Shown here: positions 34,701 to 43,670 of the stretch, one piece after another
How the letters are laid out: every line of letters starts with the position of its first letter
Numbering within the stretch: position 1 is the stretch's first letter
Source of the DNA: Styela clava
Lineage: Eukaryota
Length of the DNA: 64,000 bases
Direction: 5' to 3'
NCBI RefSeq assembly: GCF_964204865.1
Contig: NC_135252.1
Span: forward strand, 13,702,001 to 13,766,000
Notes under the pieces: model-generated
Database searches by the model: none
The model's input: the letters and a program-made list of their open reading frames with translations, nothing else
Told to the model about the DNA's origin: nothing
Made by a program: the position numbers and the translations under genes

Positions 34701-35092
34701 TCTCATTTCATCTCATACCTTCACTCTGGTCAGGACTGTGTACAAGCATACATAGATACTTCAAGAGCTCTACTATTTATGGGATGATTTGAATGTTTGT
34801 AGTCATTTTTTCTTTATAAACTAATGTGCAGTGTAATTGGGTAAATAACTTTGAGGTTTCAATTCTCTGTTTTATACTTTGTTTGTTTAATTGACAATAC
34901 TCAGTATAAAATACCATAATTATTTCAGGTATTGGTACCGCTGTAATAGATGGCAAATTCTATGTTGTCGGCGGACATTCGGGTCACGAATATCTTAACG
35001 ATGTAGAATGTTATGATCCGGGCGATAAAACATGGGAGAGATGTTCTGGGATGAATTCAGCTCGATGTGCTTTTGGTCTGGTGGCATTGTGA
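25703..35092 (+). CDS. KLHL28: Kelch-like protein 28 (BTB-BACK-6xKelch), about 555 aa, 11 exons
   Basis: Exons 25703-25888, 26681-26779, 27937-28101, 28528-28656, 29125-29310, 30399-30499, 32052-32186, 32472-32578, 33468-33654, 33821-34029, 34929-35092, all in phase. RPRCAPKLLCAVGGKNGLFA, GGYGPAH, KRINFGV and the final RCAFGLVAL match KLHL28 as recalled. Confidence 0.9.
26410..26645. mobile_element. Full-length hairpin MITE with TTAGGG and YY1-like motifs
   Basis: Long inverted arms (GGGGCTCCCGAAATATGCGAACCAAGATGGCGGAC...GGTTAGGGTTAGG / CCTAACCCTAACC...GTCCGCCATCTTGGTTCGCATACTTCGGGAGCACC); 8-bp TSD CAATATTG. Confidence 0.85.
26884..27150. mobile_element. pogo/Tigger-like MITE inserted in a (TA)n run
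   Basis: Starts TCGTATTTTACGGACCATACGGCGCA, has repeated TAAGGCGCA motifs and a degenerate right TIR, with TA repeats on both sides. Confidence 0.55.
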
Positions 35093-37941
35093 CATCATCA
35101 TGGCCTTAACAGTATTATTAGTCTCCAATGCTTACATGAGATATTCAGTTATCATTAATATTCAAGATGCAGTGCTTTAAGGCTATGTCTCTCTAAGAAT
35201 TTGAAGAGTGCCAATGGAGGACATGGAACTGAAATGCTAAGAACCTCTACGTAGTTTATTCCTTGAGACAAATATGTCAGGAAATATCGAGACTTGAAAC
35301 AATTCACGTCAGCACTAGTGAGGAAAAATTCATTTAAAAAAGCGAAGGTCTTAAGCGAAAAATATTAACATTCATAAAATTTCGATAACTAACAGAAACC
35401 CCTAGGCATGTATAGAACTCGCTCCGGACCTGGAGCCAGCATGTTGCATATATATTTTGAACAAGTACCTATATACTCTGTATTGATTACCTTTTCATTT
35501 TATTGGTTAATTGTTAATATGTATTCATTCTCTGTATGTTCATTGTAAAAAGAGATTATGTGAAATCTTAGTATTCACCAGGAATGTGGAGAATTCACTC
35601 TTGTATTGAGAGATTACTTGACGTCTAATGAATATTCATCGTGACTGTGAAGTCAGCATTTGCATGTTTATATTGACATTTTCAAACTCTCAAACTGGGA
35701 GCCAAAAGTAGAATTTAAATTTCTTTCAACTAGGAGTTGAAATGGATTCGTTTTCTAAATTTCCGAAAGTTTGGGAGTATGTTGTCGATCTTCCCCAGAC
35801 TTTGATATTCCCAGTCTTGGGCATTTAGTCGCATCACTCTAAGCAAGATGCTTGCTTAAGCCGTTACTACAGTATTCGAAGATGACATACCAATGCAGGA
35901 ATTCAATATTTTATCCCATATTTTTACATAAATGGATGTGTAAATCACTGGAGTTACAATATGAAAACAGATCAGTACAATATGCTATTGTAAATTTGTA
36001 CTTCATTAATTTGAACAAAAAATATTTTTCCATGTAATAAATCTCGCTGGGAACTTTGGCTGGGGAAAGCTAAATCCTTTTTATAAGTTCACTGGCGTTA
36101 TTTGGTCCATCTGTTCCAACTGACTAAATGTCCGATCTTTATTTTCAATAAAAAAATAAACACAAATCAGTAAGCTTTAATCTTTAGATGCATGTTTAAA
36201 ATTATTTTCCATCCCTATTACAACCATATCCAATTGTCAATAGTTCAGCGTCCATATTTGTACTTCTGTATATATATATATACTCATCACCTGTGTTCTT
36301 CAGACTTATTACTTTATATTTTGTTGCTGCAATATTTTTTTGAAATTTAAATAATGATATTGCCCAGATTATTGACTACCTAGTCGTACCATTTAAGTCT
36401 GCATATTTTGTGTAAAATAGACGTTTTTGGCGTGCTGACTTAAATGATATTTTTGCATTTCGAGTTTTGGGGACAGTTGCTGATGTAAATATATGAAATT
36501 ACTCTATGCATGAAATTATGCTCCTGTTATTATTTTAAAAACTCAGTGCGTATTATGAGATAATATTGCTTTTCCACTTATATACGTTTGATAGCTTAAT
36601 GTTTCATTCAACTGTGTAATAAATGCAAAATACTATATGTCTGGAGAATTATTATGACTGGCCTTGTATGTATTGGCATAAGGGTCTTATACCATCTGTG
36701 TTCCTCATTTTCGTTTCTCAAACAGCCAACAGAAACGCGCGCAATCGTTACAACTTGTTTATGATATAATTCCCAATTTGACATAATGTGTACCATATGC
36801 ACACGAAATTTGGAGGTTTACGTTGTCGAAAATAAGCGTTTTTTTATCTGTCGCGTGGATCCTAAAACAAAACTTAATTTTTCTTTTCGTTTTATTTGCA
36901 ATATTTTATAAAACTCTTTTCAGTATTAGTATTTACTCTCTTATTTTCAGTCGTAAGTTTGAGTTGCAGGTTCTTTTACAGTTGACGCACAGTGGCACAA
37001 GATGTGCAGCGAGATACCGTTATTGGCGACTTTTTCGGTTTTCCGAAAATTTTTAAGAGGGTGGGGGTGTTCAGCTGCTGATGAGGTGTAACATTTAGAG
37101 AATATTTATGTGAACGCGACTTAATTTTTTGCTCTTTTTCCACAACCATAAGTAATTATCTCTTTTTTGTCAGTTCAAATGATTCCTAATTTCTTTCGTA
37201 GTCAACTCCTACTAGGAATCACCGCTAACAAAACTTCGTGAGACAGTGCAGCGCTTATTTGTAATCAGCACTCTCGCAAAAATGAATCAAGTTTCGCGCC
37301 CTATTTGTTGCGCGATCTACAACACAACCTAAACGCGAGAAAGTGCATGAGCGATCGTTTTCGTTTGGCTTTGTAAAGGTACGCTCGATCTAGGTTATCA
37401 GGAAATTATGTGGCTAACAAGTTTCCTCTGTGTTTACAAGTATTAAGTAGTTTTGTCATTATACATCATTGGAACGATTACTTAAATTCGAGATCCCTCG
37501 TTCTACCAGGCCTTGTGTAGTAAACGTTTTGGTACGGGTAAATGAATACGGGGTTTATGAGAATTAGATAGTATTTTGAGGGGGAGTTTTAATGTACAAA
37601 GTTGAAGACGAAAGCGCAGAAAAACACAAACATTTATATAGTTTACATATATATATGTATGACCTATAACTCGGAGGTTATAGTATTGGAGTTGGAGTAA
37701 TAACTCATAAGGAAGTATTTAATTAAAATACTTATACCGGTAACCGCACGCGGTTAGGTGAATGCTCCGCTAAAATTATCCGCCATTGCTTATCGTGCGG
37801 TACTGTGGGGGTTCTTGCCTCACGAAGTTATTTCTAGGCTAAAAAAAATTCTCGTGAATTGTTGCTTAGTGTTTGCTATCAATTGAGTCTGTTTTCGGTA
37901 TTATTATTGGAAATTACGAACGTTCTTCCACTCGCCATCTT

Positions 37942-40900
37942 ATGAAAATGTCGACTGCAGTAATAGTAAGCGGGAGAAAAGTAGCTTTACTTCTAAAGTT
38001 ATATAGATTTTTTGCAGGTGAGAAAAAGCATTTTTCTATTATATCAAATTTGAGTATAATTAAACCAATAGATATAACCATTGTCATGGAATTTGGAGTC
38101 TGATTGGATTCTTTTACTTGTTTACAAATCTTTCCGCGTTTCTTGTTTTCTTTGTATGTTAGTAACTTGGAAAATGACGATTTTTTCTTTAGGTATTTCT
38201 CAAAAACAACTTGCAAGTGTCATGTGTGAAATGTTTGGCGAAAATATCAAAGTATCAACAATAAGTAAATTTGAACTTGGAACTGAGGTAATTTTATTAA
38301 CAGTAATAAATTTTAACAATGCTCACTACTTCGCGTATTTTTATGGCCCATCTGACGATATGACACGTGGTTTAGATATCTAGCTTCCACCAGAATGGCT
38401 CTTATTCTACCGGGTAATATCGTATTCTACCATTAACAAAGAGTAGTCTACTCACTGCTTGTGCTAGGCAGGTAGGCTAAATAACTAATATGCCACCGCA
38501 ATATTAATAGTATCCAGTCAAATGTTTTGGTCTTAATTAAAAAATTATACCAAATCTTATATTAATTTGTGTCGAATCCGAAAAAACAAATAATAAAGCC
38601 TTCTGGCTGAAACAATTTGTAAATCGAACATATCAACCTTATTCAATAATGTTTCAATTGTAGGCATGCATGCAAGATGTCAAAGATTTTTCATTGAAAG
38701 CAATGGTATGGCTGGAAATTATGGGAATAGATTGTCATTATCGCCTCGTTTCAGTCAATGACTGTGATAGCATAGATGGGATGAGAAAAAAAAGAAAGGT
38801 TGCAGAATTGCCTCCGCTCGAGAAAAGAGCTTTGGAAACACTTCGCAAAATGTGCTCGGGATTCACATTGGAGGTAAGCAGCTGTGCTGAATGTGCGTGA
38901 AACAAAGTATTATCAAAATCTTCAGAAAACCATAGGGGTACCCATCCGATTAAACTCTCCATGCAACATTCTCTCTCTTCACAACAAATCCTGTCTAAGT
39001 CGCAGAACAGTGATCCCCGCATGAGCTTGAAAGAAGTTTCACGACATACCTAGAAAATGTTATAGTTAAGCCTTGGTACGACGATTGAGTTTCTCAAGAT
39101 AAAATATAGAAGCCTATTATATTTCTTATAACAGCATCTTCAACTATTGGAAATAATATTTGGTGTTACACCAGAGGATCTACATAAATGGTCTATTCAA
39201 CTACGACGCAGACAGAAAAACTTCAATTCCATCAGAAAAAGAAAAAGGCCTCAGAATGTATGTGATTGTTTTGTTCAAAAGTTGCATTTATATAGATTTT
39301 TACCCAACATAGTTAAAGAAATGAAAAGCTTAAAATTTCATAGTTTATAGTTAAAACGTCACAAATATTCCCTCGAGGGAACGCTGTTCTACGTCAGATC
39401 CACGGCGATTATGGTGAACTAATTTTTAATGAGAAAAAGTAGAATACATATATATGTATTTTGGCAAATTGGACAGACATGAGTTTGATTTCAAATTCGA
39501 AACTCAAATTTTTATATTGATGATTTAAATTAGCTTATATCTAATCTGTTTCACTACTGCTTTTTCTGCAACCATTTTTTTCTAAAGCAGGTTTCTGAAA
39601 AGCAGTGCCGGAAAGATTTCCTTTCAATCACTGCGAAAAATCATACGGAAATTCCTGACAAACATGTTGACAGCTTAATTGTTTCAGAAGATTCTGGAAT
39701 TGAATCTGAAACGCCTGCTTCCCCAATCAAATACACGTATGTCGCTAGCTATCCATTGCGTTAATTTTATACCAGGTATTAAAGTGAACAAACTTTTGAA
39801 CACCTAGCTAGACAATATTTGCTTGTAGTATGTGAACTAAGATGGCGGACACCGGAACTTAGCATGTGTACCAGATTAGGGTTAGGCCATAATTTCAGGT
39901 ACAAATACTACGGGAGTCACTCGGCTAATCCCCGAACTCGTAATAGAACTAAAAAAAGGGAAATTGGAATCAAATTATGGCCTAACTCTAGTCTGGTACA
40001 CATACTACGTTCCGGTGTTCGCCATCTTGGTTCACATACTACGGAGGTACTAGATAGCGCACTATATGCTAAAGGATTTAATTAATCGAGCTTGAAAATT
40101 ACACGTGAGTTCGCATTTCCCCACAAGCAAAAGCATGATCTATCTCTGACTAATCGTTGTTTTAATTCTAGTAATGGGAAAACCTATGCACCCCTGCACC
40201 CAGTGACATCAGCAAAACGGAGAATAATTTACGAAGAAGCAATTGAAAACCACCGTATTTCGTATGAAATGCCCCAAACCGATACGGATGAGGATCAGTT
40301 TTCCTGTGCACTGCTTTAGGGAAGACATGAGATATTCTGTTCACAATATAGGCCTATCTATATAAACTATAATGAGGCACAAATTTTCTTACTTTTCACA
40401 AAAATAATAACACCGACACTTGCTTGAAATTCGGTTAATTTTTTACAGTTTTCTTTCATTTTGGTAACAAGTACAGCCACTCCACTTGCAAAATTTTATT
40501 TTTCTAAGAATATTCCGTTAACATAAAATAATTGCGTTCAAAATTTTCATGTCCATAATTATTTAAAATTTCCAATAACTTGGACAAGGCATTGGTTTCG
40601 TTTATTTCCACGAAGTGTATTCAAGCCTCAAATTCAAAAAAACTTCGCACAAGTATCCGTTCAAAGATAGGATATACTGAAGCCCAAAATAAAAATATTT
40701 TTATTTATTCAATGCCAAATGATACACACCGTTTAAGGCTTCGTCATGTCTCTCTATCAATACATTCTTAATAAATACCCCGCCACTCCAATATATGAAA
40801 CGATAATGGAATACTGTTTTCGAAATAGCACATGTGCATCTTTTACAGACAATCCCACGCTACCGATTTAATTGTCCTGGAAATTCATTATCGATCTTGT

Positions 40901-42141
40901 AAAATTGATTTCGTGTTCTTTCGGTTGCTGCTGCATGAGTACGTACGCGATAAGTACGAATTGCAATGTTTGTGATATTTAATTTATCAACAAGTCGCTT
41001 TTCTATTTATTTCGCATTTCTTTTTCGGGCATGCTATATTCACTCTTCGAATAAAGGAATTTTTTTTTAATATTTGTTGCTGGAGATCATAGTATTTGCA
41101 CTTTTTTACATAGACAATCGTGGGAAATTTGTTTATCCCGTTAGATAGTTAATCCCGTTAGATTAAATTTCCCAGAAGCTAACACGGTTTTATGCAAGCA
41201 GGGATTCGCCGCAAGGAGGATCTTGCAACGACTGTTCGCTTGAAGCCACGTTTCCAAGTCTGGGAGAAATTTATCCTCGAAGAGAAATTTTGTCGTTTTT
41301 GGGGGGTACTTTTACTTTGTATTTTCTGCAGTATCTAATATTCTTTATAATTTATATTAGCACACATTATAAACTACTTAAACTTTAAACAAAAAACGGG
41401 GATGCGACTTGCGCATAACACTAGCTTCATTCATTCCGAGGTATTCATTCTGGATACCTAGGATTCATTAAAAATCTAATAAATAAAGTAGTTTTTATTT
41501 ATAGTGAGACAGGAATAAAGAGTTTCTACTATGCAAAAGTAGGAATTTCGTGAAAAGGTTCGGAAGCACTGTCCCAAGGCTCCCATCACCATCCGAGAAT
41601 GCGTGTTATTTAGTCAACCCCGTTCAGACTTCCGATTTTCAAATTCGATCATATATCAATGCCAACCCTTAAATAAAAATATTCGGTTGATCGAACAGTA
41701 TGATCACAAATAAACCAAATATTTGGATAGTAGAATAACTGATATCCAAAACAACCCAACTTATAACAACACCGCCATAATACTCTATTGTACAAACAGC
41801 CTGCAAACATGTTGACCTTGAATATTTCCTATAAATAATACACGTTGAGTTATAATAAGCATTTACATTATAGTAAACACTTGTGGCAAACACTTCCAAT
41901 AATTTTCAACTTCAATAAAGGGAGACAACATATATCAGTTACGCAAGACGTAATACAAAAAGTGGGAAACGAACATCTGCCGCTCAGTGACGATAGTAAA
42001 GATATATATAATTTGTCAAACGGAAAGTTATTTTGCTCAAATCGAAATGATTCGGTCCAGAGAGTGACGAGTGAGAAGTTGGTCTCAACGATAAAACGCA
42101 CGGTACGATTTAGCTTACCCATATTTGGGAGATGCTACTGA
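37942..42141 (+). CDS. Highly divergent POU-domain (POU-specific + homeodomain) protein; about 384 aa, or about 265 aa if it ends at 40319
   Basis: Exons 37942-38017, 38193-38287, 38664-38873, 39135-39257, 39591-39736, 40172-40261 (or to the stop at 40319), then less certain 40849-40938, 41202-41305, 41921-42141; all phases are compatible. POU-specific-like VALLLKLYRFFAGISQKQLASVMCEMFGENIKVSTISKFE...KAMVWLE; homeodomain-like RKKRKVAELPPLEKRALE...LHKWSIQLRRRQK. The start codon is uncertain. Confidence 0.7.
39826..40050. mobile_element. Hairpin MITE (TTAGGG/YY1-motif family) in a POU-like intron
   Basis: GTAGTATGTGAACTAAGATGGCGGACACCGGAAC...TTAGGGTTAGG...GTTCCGGTGTTCGCCATCTTGGTTCACATACTAC; homologous to 26410-26645. 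Confidence 0.85.
41962..41979 (-). promoter_or_regulatory. Candidate PTF1 (Ptf1a/E-protein/RBPJ) bipartite site upstream of the colipase-like gene
   Basis: The minus strand reads CAGATG-ttcg-TTTCCCAC: an E-box, a 4-nt spacer and a TC-box, about 700 bp before the colipase-like ATG. Confidence 0.45.
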
Positions 42142-42673
42142 TATATATGCTTAAATGAAATACGATTAGGTAAAAGAAAAACCTGTTCCTATTCCACAGT
42201 TATAAAGTAAGTGAATTTCTAGCCCTCGTTCGCCTTTATGTACACTTATACACGTTATAACTCACATCAAATGGTAAATATTTGAGCTCGATTATATAAA
42301 ATAAGCACATTTTAATTCAGTTGACAGCTAGAGCAGTAACAAGTACGGAAGTACGCAGTCGTTTGCCACACCTGCACTGTTTTATTGAAATTTATCCCCG
42401 GGTGATTTCAAGTTTCAGTGGAGTTTAAGTCAAAACTTAAATATTCCACAGAATTACTACACGAATTTGAGTACAAAAAGATAATTTCTTTCATAAACTA
42501 GTTTCACTAAGAACGCGGAGTGAGTGATCGTAGCAGTACTTACTTTATATCATTTACATTGTGCATTTGAACTGCATTTCCATTCTAGCTAAATACCAAC
42601 CTAGTTGTAATTATTGCAGTTGTCATTTTTGTAACCTAATTGTAACTTTTCTGCCGCCATCTCTTGATCAAAA

Positions 42674-43670
42674 ATGTTTCTCAGAATTATATTGTTCTAC
42701 TGCTGTTTAGCATTGGTGACATGCTCAGTAGAGAAAAATTTAGTAATCAATTTAGTAAGTACTATTTATTTGTGCTAATTTGACGTATTTGTAACCCACC
42801 CGTGCAGGACGCGGTAATACTGCACCTGTTTTTCTAGGAAAACGGAGAAATATGTGCTTTTGGAAGTCAGTGTTTGAGTGGATGCTGCAAAAGGAACGGA
42901 GTCGTACTTCGATGTTCAAGTCTTAGCAAGGAAGGTGCTCAATGTACAAGAGACGTGAGTACCGGAATAGTTTAATCGATGTCTAGCAACAACAAAAATG
43001 GGTAGTCAGACCTGAAGATTTTATTGTCTCGGGTTTATATCGTTTTCTCGAACTTCACGCAAACAGCAGAAAAATTTTAAAACCCGGATTCGACTTGAAA
43101 TCCGGAAGGCGAAGCTGGTGATTCTGGCCCAATTTCAAGTACTCAGCATTGAAGTTTTTAGCTCGTTCCTAGATTTAAGAAAGTGACCTTTCAAACGTAT
43201 TTTTTGAACATCTGTTTACAAGTTGCATCTTTAATAAGATAATAGTAATGCATATATTTCTAAATATAATTGGGCTATCATTCAACAACGTACGTGACCA
43301 GTAATCAATCAGGATATATATAATCTCATTTGCTGATAGACTTCCTGCACGATTATCAACCTGCATGACCTGACTTCAATAAGAAAGTTCTTTTCTAAAG
43401 TTCCTCTTAAATCTGTACCAATTTCGAATTTATTTTATTTTTATTAGGTAGCCATTTGTAAGATTTGATGGGTAAAAAACAAATCAAGAAAGTAGCATTA
43501 ACTTTCTTGAGCACGCAGCGCTCACGTGACGGAATTTATAAATCGCAGAATAATCCATAAAAAAAATTATTTTGTAGGATATGTTGGACACCGAGGTTTT
43601 TCATTGCCATTGCGAGATGGGATTACAATGCGACAGACAAACAGACGTATGCGTGGACGGGAACGCATAA
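42674..43670 (+). CDS. CLPS: Colipase-like secreted protein, 96 aa, 3 exons
   Basis: Exons 42674-42754, 42838-42954, 43578-43670 (phase 0/0) give MFLRIILFYCCLALVTC-SVEKNLVINL|ENGEICAFGSQCLSGCCKRNGVVLRCSSLSKEGAQCTRD|DMLDTEVFHCHCEMGLQCDRQTDVCVDGNA*. Signal peptide, 10 mature cysteines in colipase spacing, and an INL|ENGE junction as in human colipase; AATAAA near 43781. Confidence 0.85.

What the first reader, a model, noticed from the sequence alone, without database searches (positions are those of the whole stretch)
37942..39257. Extremely divergent POU gene with altered DNA-contact residues
Seen: four in-phase exons encode POU-specific-like and homeodomain-like halves in the correct order. 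Canonical SQTTICRFE becomes KVSTISKFE, and VRVWFCNRRQK becomes LHKWSIQLRRRQK. Known: homeodomain Asn51/Cys50 and the recognition-helix Gln are central to octamer binding. Inference: a POU factor with new specificity, or a non-DNA-binding decoy or cofactor. Automated annotation could easily miss it.
Basis: partly seen in the sequence, partly recalled or inferred. Interest (0 to 1): 0.8.

Follow-up and report, generated by a model that had tools for sequence, protein, structure and literature searches.

The report
Degenerate orphan POU-like gene, Styela clava
A sea-squirt gene that public annotation calls "uncharacterized" is transcribed and spliced, and it encodes a badly eroded two-part POU DNA-binding domain that has lost most residues that read the octamer site, so it is probably a fast-evolving POU duplicate with a changed or lost DNA-binding role.

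Summary
The four exons (37942-38017, 38193-38287, 38664-38873, 39135-39257, + strand) are real. Spliced contigs from RNA-type runs of three studies join them exactly at GT..AG borders and add two more coding exons (39591-39736, 40172-40319).

The product is RefSeq XP_039267729, "uncharacterized protein LOC120342812 [Styela clava]", 266 aa. It is single-copy and has no detectable relative among billions of public proteins.

The POU reading is supported, but only below curated thresholds.
- **Pfam:** Pou scores 18 bits (cut-off 27) and ties with HTH_3. There is no Homeodomain hit.
- **PDB:** the best sequence hits are Oct4/Oct1, collinear over both halves (E about 0.2).
- **hhalign** against a POU profile: score 38.7, 83% probability, 0 of 110 shuffles as high.
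- **POU-specific half**, 40 ungapped columns: 16 bits, 0 of 5000 shuffles.
- **Homeodomain half:** invisible to local searches, but it aligns without gaps over 58 columns at +10 bits (1 of 5000 best-register shuffles).

Fold residues are kept. Base-contact residues are replaced (POUs Q44V; homeodomain R5V, V47K, C50I, N51Q, F49S). The frame is intact in all alleles and pN/pS is about 0.27.

Verdict: a lineage-restricted, rapidly diverged POU-derived gene. Octamer binding is unlikely, and its real activity is untested. The gene model was already annotated; its POU affinity was not.

The parts
37326..37941 (+). 5' leader of the long transcript form, with 8 upstream ATGs and uORFs of 3-25 codons; shorter contigs begin near 37871-37879
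   Evidence: Contigs of X1 and X2 run unbroken from 37326/37359 to 38015. uATG count and the in-frame upstream stop at 37867 are.
37942..38017 (+). Exon 1 coding part (M1 to the first base of G26): helix 1 of the POU-specific-like domain
   Evidence: Translation; junction 38017|38193 in four runs.
38193..38287 (+). Exon 2 (G26-E57): helices 2-3 of the POU-specific-like domain, including KVSTISKFE at 38249-38275
   Evidence: Translation. Pfam Pou E 0.017 on this exon alone. It is the only non-canonical PF00157 hit in the six-frame genome search (19.7 bits).
38664..38873 (+). Exon 3 (A58-E127): POU-specific helix 4 (to about 38723), a linker of about 20 aa, then the basic arm RKKRK and helix 1 of the homeodomain-like half (from 38784)
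   Evidence: Translation; junctions; 100% match to RefSeq protein P0001.
39135..39257 (+). Exon 4 (H128-N168): homeodomain-like helices 2-3 (to about 39224), including LHKWSIQLRRRQK at 39180-39218, and the basic cluster RKRKR
   Evidence: Translation; junctions 38873|39135 and 39257|39591.
39591..39736 (+). Exon 5: tail with no known domain; NAGNAG alternative acceptor at 39588 (adds Q169); alternative donor at 39775 (isoform X3, 226 aa)
40172..40319 (+). Exon 6 coding part: tail ending in an acidic patch (TDTDEDQF), stop TAG at 40317-40319; the 3' UTR continues to at least 40471
39825..40042 (.). MITE-like inverted repeat inside intron 5; not part of the protein
   Evidence: Arms of 71 nt, 92% complementary; contig depth of 10^3-10^4 there.

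Best explanation
**What it is.** LOC120342812 of Styela clava is a single-copy, six-exon, expressed gene for a 265/266-aa protein.
- Residues about 10-77 form a POU-specific-like four-helix domain.
- A linker of about 20 residues follows.
- Residues 98-157 form a homeodomain-like three-helix unit.
- After that come a basic cluster and a tail of about 100 residues with no known domain, ending in an acidic patch.

**Origin (inferred).** A POU gene was duplicated in the tunicate lineage. One copy then diverged fast, to about 20-24% identity with canonical POU domains, while staying under selection as a coding gene.

**What is kept.** Fold-determining residues remain.
- POU-specific half: R20, Q27, G39, T46, I47, S48, F50, E51 and W/L of helix 4.
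- Homeodomain half: L16, E17, L34, W48, R53, K57 and the KKRK arm.

**What is replaced.** Most base-reading residues are changed.
- POU-specific half: S43K, Q44V, T45S, R49K.
- Homeodomain half: R5V, V47K, F49S, C50I, N51Q, and core F20R.

**How it most likely works (inferred).** It cannot read the ATGCAAAT octamer the way Oct-1 or Pit-1 do. It is most likely a nuclear protein, given its three basic clusters. It either binds a different DNA motif (I put this at about 45%) or acts without sequence-specific DNA binding, as a partner or competitor of other factors in the manner of HOPX (about 35%).

**Shown:** gene structure, transcription and splicing, the intact frame, single copy, weak but reproducible POU similarity in both halves, and the replaced contact residues.

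**Inferred:** descent from a POU gene, nuclear location, and any activity.
For: **Gene and expression**
- Splicing and the two extra exons.
- RefSeq identity and isoforms.
- Single copy.

**POU similarity over the whole domain**
- Pfam Pou is the top family for exon 2 alone (E 0.017) and for the whole protein (E 0.0028, 18 bits). That corresponds to about 1e-7 for this one model.
- Six of the eight best PDB sequence hits are Oct4/Oct1 POU domains, aligned collinearly over residues 13-158.
- BLASTP against the same genome's POU3 domain gives 27.3 bits, E 8e-5, 24% identity over 153 aa across both halves.
- hhalign against 40 POU sequences gives E 1.9e-4. Trimmed to the domain, the score is 38.7, probability 83% and E 8.8e-6, against shuffles with mean 13.4 and maximum 23.9 (0 of 110).

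**Each half on its own**
- POU-specific half: hhalign score 28.0 (0 of 110 shuffles). It also aligns without gaps over 40 columns at 16 bits (0 of 5000 shuffles), so it has the long helix 2-3 loop typical of POU rather than of XRE-type HTH domains.
- Homeodomain half: 58 ungapped columns score +10.0 bits. This is by far the best register in the protein (the next is -13.7). It was reached by 0 of 200000 fixed-register shuffles and 1 of 5000 best-register shuffles.
- With both basic clusters held fixed, the interior of the homeodomain half still gives p = 5.5e-4.
- MAFFT finds the same register independently.

**Coding constraint**
- The 266-codon frame is intact in every allele seen, although a random frame of that length at 35% GC stays open with probability 3e-9.
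- Listed SNPs split 7 synonymous to 7 non-synonymous, so pN/pS is 0.27 with one-sided p = 0.016.
Against: **Similarity**
- No curated threshold is met: Pou scores 18 bits against a cut-off of 27.
- Pfam HTH_3 scores the same as Pou.
- There is no Pfam Homeodomain hit.
- The homeodomain half alone scores at null level with HMMER (-3.2 bits) and with hhalign (9.2 against a null of 11.1). Alone it retrieves no homeodomain from PDB; its best hit is a coiled coil at E 0.15.
- The shuffle controls keep composition only. They do not keep helical periodicity.

**Structure**
- AlphaFold2 without an alignment gives no confident fold (pLDDT 36).
- The confident model and its POU matches were made with a POU alignment, so they are circular.

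**Ancestry and constraint**
- Intron positions are not shared with the POU2- and POU4-like genes of the same genome.
- No orthologue is known, so there is no between-species dN/dS.
- The SNP list is truncated (27 rows are not shown).
Confidence: 0.78

Rival explanations
1. Chance resemblance. The protein is an orphan helical protein, possibly with a generic XRE/Cro-type helix-turn-helix at its N-terminus, followed by an unrelated basic helical region. It has no POU ancestry.
For: - Pfam HTH_3 ties with Pou.
- All similarity is below curated thresholds.
- The homeodomain half is not found by local profile or PDB searches.
- No relatives exist to anchor its ancestry.
- Intron positions differ from the canonical POU genes of the genome.
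Against: - Two separate regions each beat their shuffles, in the right order and spacing.
- The HTH_3 match needs a 6-residue insertion and covers only helices 2-3. The POU match is ungapped over helices 1-3.
- The distance from the basic arm to W48 equals that of a homeodomain exactly.
- POU proteins are the top PDB hits over the full length.
Confidence: 0.13
2. An expressed but decaying POU duplicate: a transcribed pseudogene, or a gene on its way to loss, whose protein has no function.
For: - Key DNA-contact and core residues are lost (N51Q, F49S, F20R, Q44V).
- There are no detectable orthologues.
- The long leader carries 8 uATGs.
- SNP density in the exons is similar to that in the leader.
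Against: - A 266-codon frame across six exons is intact in all alleles despite about 80% sequence divergence.
- All splice sites are canonical and used.
- pN/pS is 0.27.
- No non-synonymous SNP lies in POU-specific helices 1-3 or in the three homeodomain helices. The seven lie at the N-terminus, the start of helix 4, the linker, the basic arm, just after helix 3 and in the tail.
Confidence: 0.06
3. A member of the HNF class (HNF1/HMBOX type), which also pairs a POU-like domain with an atypical homeodomain.
For: [quoted passage not shown] HNF1 chains appear far down the Foldseek list (ranks 38, 41 and 45, E above 2).
Against: - The similarity is to true POU domains in every search.
- There is no 21-residue insertion between helices 2 and 3. 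The homeodomain half aligns without gaps to POU homeodomains.
- The protein starts directly with the POU-specific-like helix 1, so it has no N-terminal dimerisation region.
Confidence: 0.02

Closest known systems
Canonical POU-class transcription factors (Oct-1/POU2F1, Oct4/POU5F1, Brn/POU3, Brn3/POU4; Pfam PF00157 + PF00046)
   Same: - The order is the same: a POU-specific four-helix domain, a flexible linker of about 20 aa, then a 60-residue homeodomain with an N-terminal basic arm.
- Fold residues are conserved: R20, Q27, G39, I47, F50, E51 and W/L of helix 4 in the POU-specific half; L16, E17, W48 and R53 in the homeodomain half.
- The helix 2-3 loop length is identical to that of POU classes 2 and 3.
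   Different: - Identity is only about 20-24%, and Pfam scores fall below the cut-offs.
- Base-contact residues are replaced: Q44V, S43K, R5V, V47K, C50I, N51Q.
- Core residues F20 and F49 are lost.
- There is no N-terminal activation region.
- It cannot be assigned to any of classes I-VI.
- Its intron positions differ from those of the POU2- and POU4-like genes of the same genome.
- No orthologues were found.
HDX (highly divergent homeobox) and POU5F2/Sprm1: divergent or orphan members placed in the POU class (PMC2211742)
   Same: These are lineage-restricted, strongly diverged genes that sit at the edge of the POU class. For HDX, class membership is debatable.
   Different: HDX has an atypical 68-residue homeodomain and no POU-specific domain. 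Here both halves are present and both are degenerate. There is no evidence of orthology with either gene.
HOPX (homeodomain-only protein): a homeodomain fold that does not bind DNA and acts through partners (from general knowledge; not tested here)
   Same: It keeps a homeodomain-like fold but lacks the canonical DNA-reading residues. It is a model for how such a protein could act as a cofactor or competitor.
   Different: HOPX is a single, small, conserved homeodomain of another class. Loss of DNA binding is shown for HOPX and is only inferred here.
Fast-evolving orphan homeobox genes produced by duplication and asymmetric divergence (for example the orphan families listed in PMC2211742: Argfx, Dprx, Leutx, Tprx, Rhox)
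   Same: The pattern is the same: a lineage-specific duplicate with very rapid sequence change, altered recognition-helix residues, and poor detection by standard profiles.
   Different: Those genes belong to the PRD or other classes in mammals. A comparable case inside the otherwise very conserved POU class, and in a tunicate, did not turn up in the literature I searched.

Membership tests
POU class homeobox genes | POU-specific domain (about 75 aa, four helices, Pfam PF00157) N-terminal to the homeodomain | tested here: inconclusive
   Pfam Pou scores 18 bits with E 0.0028, below the 27-bit cut-off. hhalign on the POU-specific half scores 28.0, 62% probability, 0 of 110 shuffles. An ungapped 40-column profile scores 16 bits, 0 of 5000 shuffles. 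Similarity is significant, but the curated threshold is not reached.
POU class homeobox genes | POU-type homeodomain (Pfam PF00046) with W48, F49, C50, N51 and R53 | tested here: not met
   W48 and R53 are present, but F49S, C50I and N51Q are changed. There is no Pfam Homeodomain hit and local profile scores are at null level. Only the ungapped global alignment is significant (+10 bits, 1 of 5000 shuffles; interior p = 5.5e-4).
POU class homeobox genes | Both subdomains on one chain, in order, joined by a flexible linker of about 15-56 residues | tested here: met
   Helix 4 ends near residue 77 and the basic arm starts at residue 98. Collinear alignments cover both halves.
POU class homeobox genes | Base-contact residues of the octamer-reading surface (POU-specific Q44, T45, R49; homeodomain V47, C50, N51; residue roles recalled from the Oct-1/DNA structure) | tested here: not met
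   Q44V, T45S, R49K, V47K, C50I and N51Q, read from the alignments.
POU class homeobox genes | Assignment to one of the classes POU1-POU6 by orthology | tested here: inconclusive
   Homeodomain identity is 21% to the POU3- and POU2-like genes and 25% to the POU4-like gene of the same genome (my count from the sequences). BLASTP of single exons gives 18 bits for the POU4-like exon and 11.5 bits for the POU2-like exon. The POU-specific half lacks the longer helix 2-3 loop of POU4, a feature I recall from vertebrate Brn3 sequences and did not check in the S. clava gene. Introns are not shared. I built no tree because I held no sequences of classes 1, 4, 5 or 6.
XRE/Cro-type HTH (Pfam HTH_3, PF01381) | Short helix 2 - turn - helix 3 unit, matched above the 23-bit cut-off | tested here: not met
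   The score is 18 bits (cut-off 23). Thirty residues match 24 profile positions, so an insertion is needed, and only helices 2-3 are covered.
HNF class (HNF1/HMBOX) | POU-like domain plus a homeodomain with a long insertion between helices 2 and 3 (PMC2211742) | tested here: not met
   The homeodomain-like half aligns without gaps to POU homeodomains. HNF1 chains appear only at E above 2 in Foldseek.

The most novel reading that the evidence does not exclude
This may be the first POU-class protein to have left octamer recognition altogether. One form would be a HOPX-like protein that binds no DNA and titrates POU partners or cofactors. The other would be a factor with a new bipartite DNA specificity set by V44/K49 in the POU-specific helix and K47/I50/Q51 in the homeodomain helix. 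In either case it arose recently in styelid tunicates by duplication and runaway divergence.
Probability: 0.35. Interest if true: 0.65.

Novelty: new variant of a known kind. Interest (0 to 1): 0.48.

Why it matters
POU domains are among the most conserved DNA-binding modules of animals, and tunicates are usually credited with only two or three POU genes. The Styela clava transcription-factor catalogue lists two (PMC8122590).

This gene is expressed, kept open by selection and POU-derived, yet both halves have drifted past profile thresholds and the invariant Asn51 is gone. It therefore does three things.
- It shows that domain-based transcription-factor catalogues miss this kind of gene.
- It offers a natural experiment on how far a bipartite POU domain can diverge while still being maintained.
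- It gives a concrete candidate for testing whether POU scaffolds can be re-used for new DNA motifs or for DNA-independent roles.

It is a modest but real addition, not a new kind of system.

Tried and rejected
**Intron positions as proof of ancestry: no exact match.**
- The POU2-like gene (contig C4) has POU-specific introns after GFTQ (phase 0) and inside the Ser codon after EALNL (phase 2), and a homeodomain intron at 22|23.
- The POU4-like gene (C18) has a homeodomain intron at 23|24.
- This gene has introns in the Gly codon before ISQ (phase 1), after FELGTE (phase 0, which is 2 nt away from the POU2 position), and at homeodomain 29|30.

**Searches for relatives: none found.**
- phmmer with exon 3 against 1.84 billion representatives found only the RefSeq protein itself and a junk repeat protein.
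- The word search with the whole protein found only itself.
- The six-frame search of the own genome found no paralogue.

**Structure prediction.**
- AlphaFold2 on the single sequence was unusable (pLDDT 36).
- AlphaFold2 with a POU alignment, followed by Foldseek, gave POU hits. That result is circular and I count it only as a consistency check.

**Local searches for the homeodomain half: nothing** (Pfam, my own HMM, hhalign, PDB).

**Class assignment:** attempted by exon-wise BLAST and left unresolved.

**Literature:** no paper mentions the locus or a divergent tunicate POU gene.

**Other.**
Exons were searched one by one. All full-length analyses used the public RefSeq protein that the database returned (P0001/P0004), or an unchanged stretch of it.
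Full report
**Observation.** The region 37942-39257 (+) holds four open exon-like stretches with GT..AG borders. They translate as follows:
- exon 1: MKMSTAVIVSGRKVALLLKLYRFFA(G)
- exon 2: ISQKQLASVMCEMFGENIKVSTISKFELGTE
- exon 3: ACMQD...RKKRKVAELPPLEKRALETLRKMCSGFTLE
- exon 4: HLQLLEIIFGVTPEDLHKWSIQLRRRQKNFNSIRKRKRPQN

**Transcription and gene model.** One search for sequencing runs gave ten holders from four studies, all of one coded organism. I laid contigs of four runs from three studies on 37300-42600.
- The contigs skip exactly the predicted introns: 38017|38193, 38287|38664, 38873|39135.
- They continue through two further introns, 39257|39591 and 39736|40172, with an alternative donor at 39775. 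All are GT..AG.
- The gene therefore has six coding exons and stops at 40317-40319.
- The long contigs start at 37326-37359. This gives a 616-nt leader with eight uATGs and an in-frame stop at 37867.
- The runs are only guessed to be RNA. The intron-less joins in a gene that is single-copy in the genome are what cDNA would give.

- phmmer with exon 3 against 1.84 billion representatives returned one real hit, P0001 (266 aa, 100% identical over the exon).
- Its cluster is RefSeq XP_039267729/30/31, [quoted passage not shown].
- P0004 equals the window's six exon translations. P0005 lacks Q169 through a NAGNAG acceptor. P0003 uses the alternative donor.
- All full-length analyses below use this database protein.
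- So the gene model is already annotated, but without a name. The published S. clava transcription-factor catalogue counts two Pou genes (PMC8122590).
- A six-frame PF00157 search of this genome finds three canonical loci: an intronless POU3-like gene on C1, a POU2-like gene on C4 and a POU4-like gene on C18. The present locus is the only extra hit, and it is weak (19.7 bits).

**Is it POU? The N-terminal half.**
- Pfam ranks Pou first for exon 2 alone (E 0.017) and for the whole protein (E 0.0028, 18 bits, profile positions 10-48). It ties with HTH_3, and both are below their cut-offs.
- The hmmscan E-value is multiplied by 24,736 models. The probability for the Pou model alone is therefore about 1e-7, which would stay below 0.01 across a proteome of 20,000-30,000 proteins (my inference).
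- hhalign of residues 1-96 against the POU-specific columns of 40 POU proteins scores 28.0, against shuffles with mean 10.5 and maximum 19.0.
- An ungapped 40-column profile from helix 1 to the RFE of helix 3 scores 16.0 bits. It is the best register in the protein, and no shuffle out of 5000 reached it.
- No gap is needed, so the long helix 2-3 loop typical of POU is present. The HTH_3 match needs a 6-residue insertion and covers only helices 2-3.

**The C-terminal half.** Local methods see nothing here.
- There is no Pfam Homeodomain hit.
- My POU-homeodomain HMM gives -3.2 bits.
- hhalign gives 9.2 against a null of 11.1.
- A PDB search with residues 92-168 finds no homeodomain.

A global test does see it.
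- The 58 residues R98-K155 align to the POU homeodomain profile without any gap at +10.0 bits.
- The next-best register of the protein scores -13.7.
- None of 200,000 fixed-register shuffles reached this score, and 1 of 5000 whole-protein shuffles did when the best register was taken.
- With both basic clusters held in place, the interior (positions 5-52) still gives p = 5.5e-4, or 6.6e-3 without W48.
- MAFFT reaches the same register independently: L114=L16, E115=E17, W146=W48, R151=R53.

**Both halves together.**
- BLASTP against the genome's own POU3 domain gives 27.3 bits, E 8e-5 and 24% identity over 153 residues.
- The six best PDB hits are Oct4/Oct1 POU domains, collinear over residues 13-158 (E 0.19-0.5).
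- hhalign of residues 1-170 against the trimmed POU alignment gives score 38.7, 83% probability and E 8.8e-6, against shuffles with mean 13.4 and maximum 23.9. Against the untrimmed alignment the probability is 48% and E is 1.9e-4.
- Two regions are each significant on their own, and they lie in the right order and spacing. This makes POU descent the best reading.
- I put it near 0.8 rather than higher for three reasons: every score is below a curated threshold, the shuffles keep composition only, and the locus was chosen because it looked POU-like.

**Structure.**
- AlphaFold2 on the single sequence failed (pLDDT 36). Its helices do fall where POU helices would: 11-25, 29-40, 61-76, 111-121, 126-136 and 140-163.
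- With a POU alignment, the model is confident in the POU-specific half (pLDDT 88-93) and fair in the homeodomain half (69-89).
- Foldseek then ranks POU2F3, Oct4, Oct1, Brn2 and Pit-1 first.
- This second result is circular and counts only as a consistency check.

**What changed.** Residue numbering is that of Oct-1. The residue roles come from established knowledge of the Oct-1/DNA complex and were not tested here.
- Kept in the POU-specific half: R20, Q27, G39, T46, I47, S48, F50, E51 and helix-4 W/L.
- Kept in the homeodomain half: the KKRK arm, K13, L16, E17, L34, E43, W48, R53 and K57.
- Replaced: S43K, Q44V, T45S and R49K in the POU-specific half; R5V, F20R, V47K, F49S, C50I and N51Q in the homeodomain half.
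The ungapped register places Q at position 51 and keeps R53.

**Selection.**
- At 35% GC, a random 266-codon frame stays open with probability 3e-9. Here it is open in two RefSeq versions and in all contigs.
- The SNPs listed split into 7 non-synonymous (K2E, T5P, A58S, C91Y, K100R, N156S and Y-to-N at codon 31 of the exon 6 frame) and 7 synonymous.
- With 622 non-synonymous and 167 synonymous sites, pN/pS is 0.27 (one-sided p = 0.016).
- None of the non-synonymous changes lies in POU-specific helices 1-3 or in the three homeodomain helices.
- The SNP list is truncated, so this evidence is weak.

**Origin.**
- There is no paralogue in the genome and no relative in two very large protein searches.
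- Tunicate coverage of those libraries is unknown, so 'species-specific' is not shown.
- Intron positions are not shared with the POU2- or POU4-like genes. The nearest case differs by 2 nt.
- The class is unresolved. Homeodomain helix 1 (KKRK....EKRALE) looks most like POU4. The loop length of the POU-specific half matches the POU2- and POU3-like genes.

**Mechanism.**
- The most likely picture is a small nuclear protein with a degenerate POU scaffold that no longer reads the octamer.
- Whether it binds another motif or acts without DNA cannot be decided from sequence.
- Rivals are a chance resemblance or generic HTH (0.13), an expressed decaying duplicate (0.06) and the HNF class (0.02).

**Limits.**
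- No other tunicate genome could be searched with these tools.
- The tissues and stages of the runs are coded and unknown.

Noticed in passing
window 39825-40042 (intron 5): A MITE-like inverted repeat with 71-nt arms that are 92% complementary. Contigs of RNA-type runs pile up over 39778-40131 at depths of 10^3-10^4, with many loose ends, so this is a very high-copy, transcribed repeat family.
   Followed up: partly
window 37326-37941: The long-leader transcript form carries 8 upstream ATGs, with uORFs of 3-25 codons. Contigs of two other runs start near 37871-37879, which suggests a second start site or translational control.
   Followed up: partly
window 39588/39591 and 39736/39775: A NAGNAG acceptor adds or omits Q169 (RefSeq isoforms X1 and X2). 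An alternative donor 39 nt downstream gives the truncated isoform X3 (226 aa). The 39591 acceptor and both donors are seen in the run contigs.
   Followed up: yes
G000:C1:10662970-10664424 (L010), G000:C4:24580700-24587800 (L008), G000:C18:10945700-10946800 (L009): The genome holds three canonical POU genes: an intronless POU3-like gene, a POU2-like gene and a POU4-like gene. The published Styela clava transcription-factor catalogue (PMC8122590) lists only two Pou genes.
   Followed up: partly
Only 39591-39736 and 40172-40319 are coding. The rest is intron 5, 3' UTR and intergenic DNA, so any motif claimed beyond 40319 is not in the protein.
   Followed up: partly
window 35000-35100 and 42674 onward: The flanking genes are on the same strand. 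Upstream, a gene ends near 35100 with a kelch-repeat-like C-terminus; this is my reading of the sequence and I did not test it. Downstream, a signal-peptide-like ORF starts at 42674; this is the colipase-like gene of the earlier notes.
   Followed up: no
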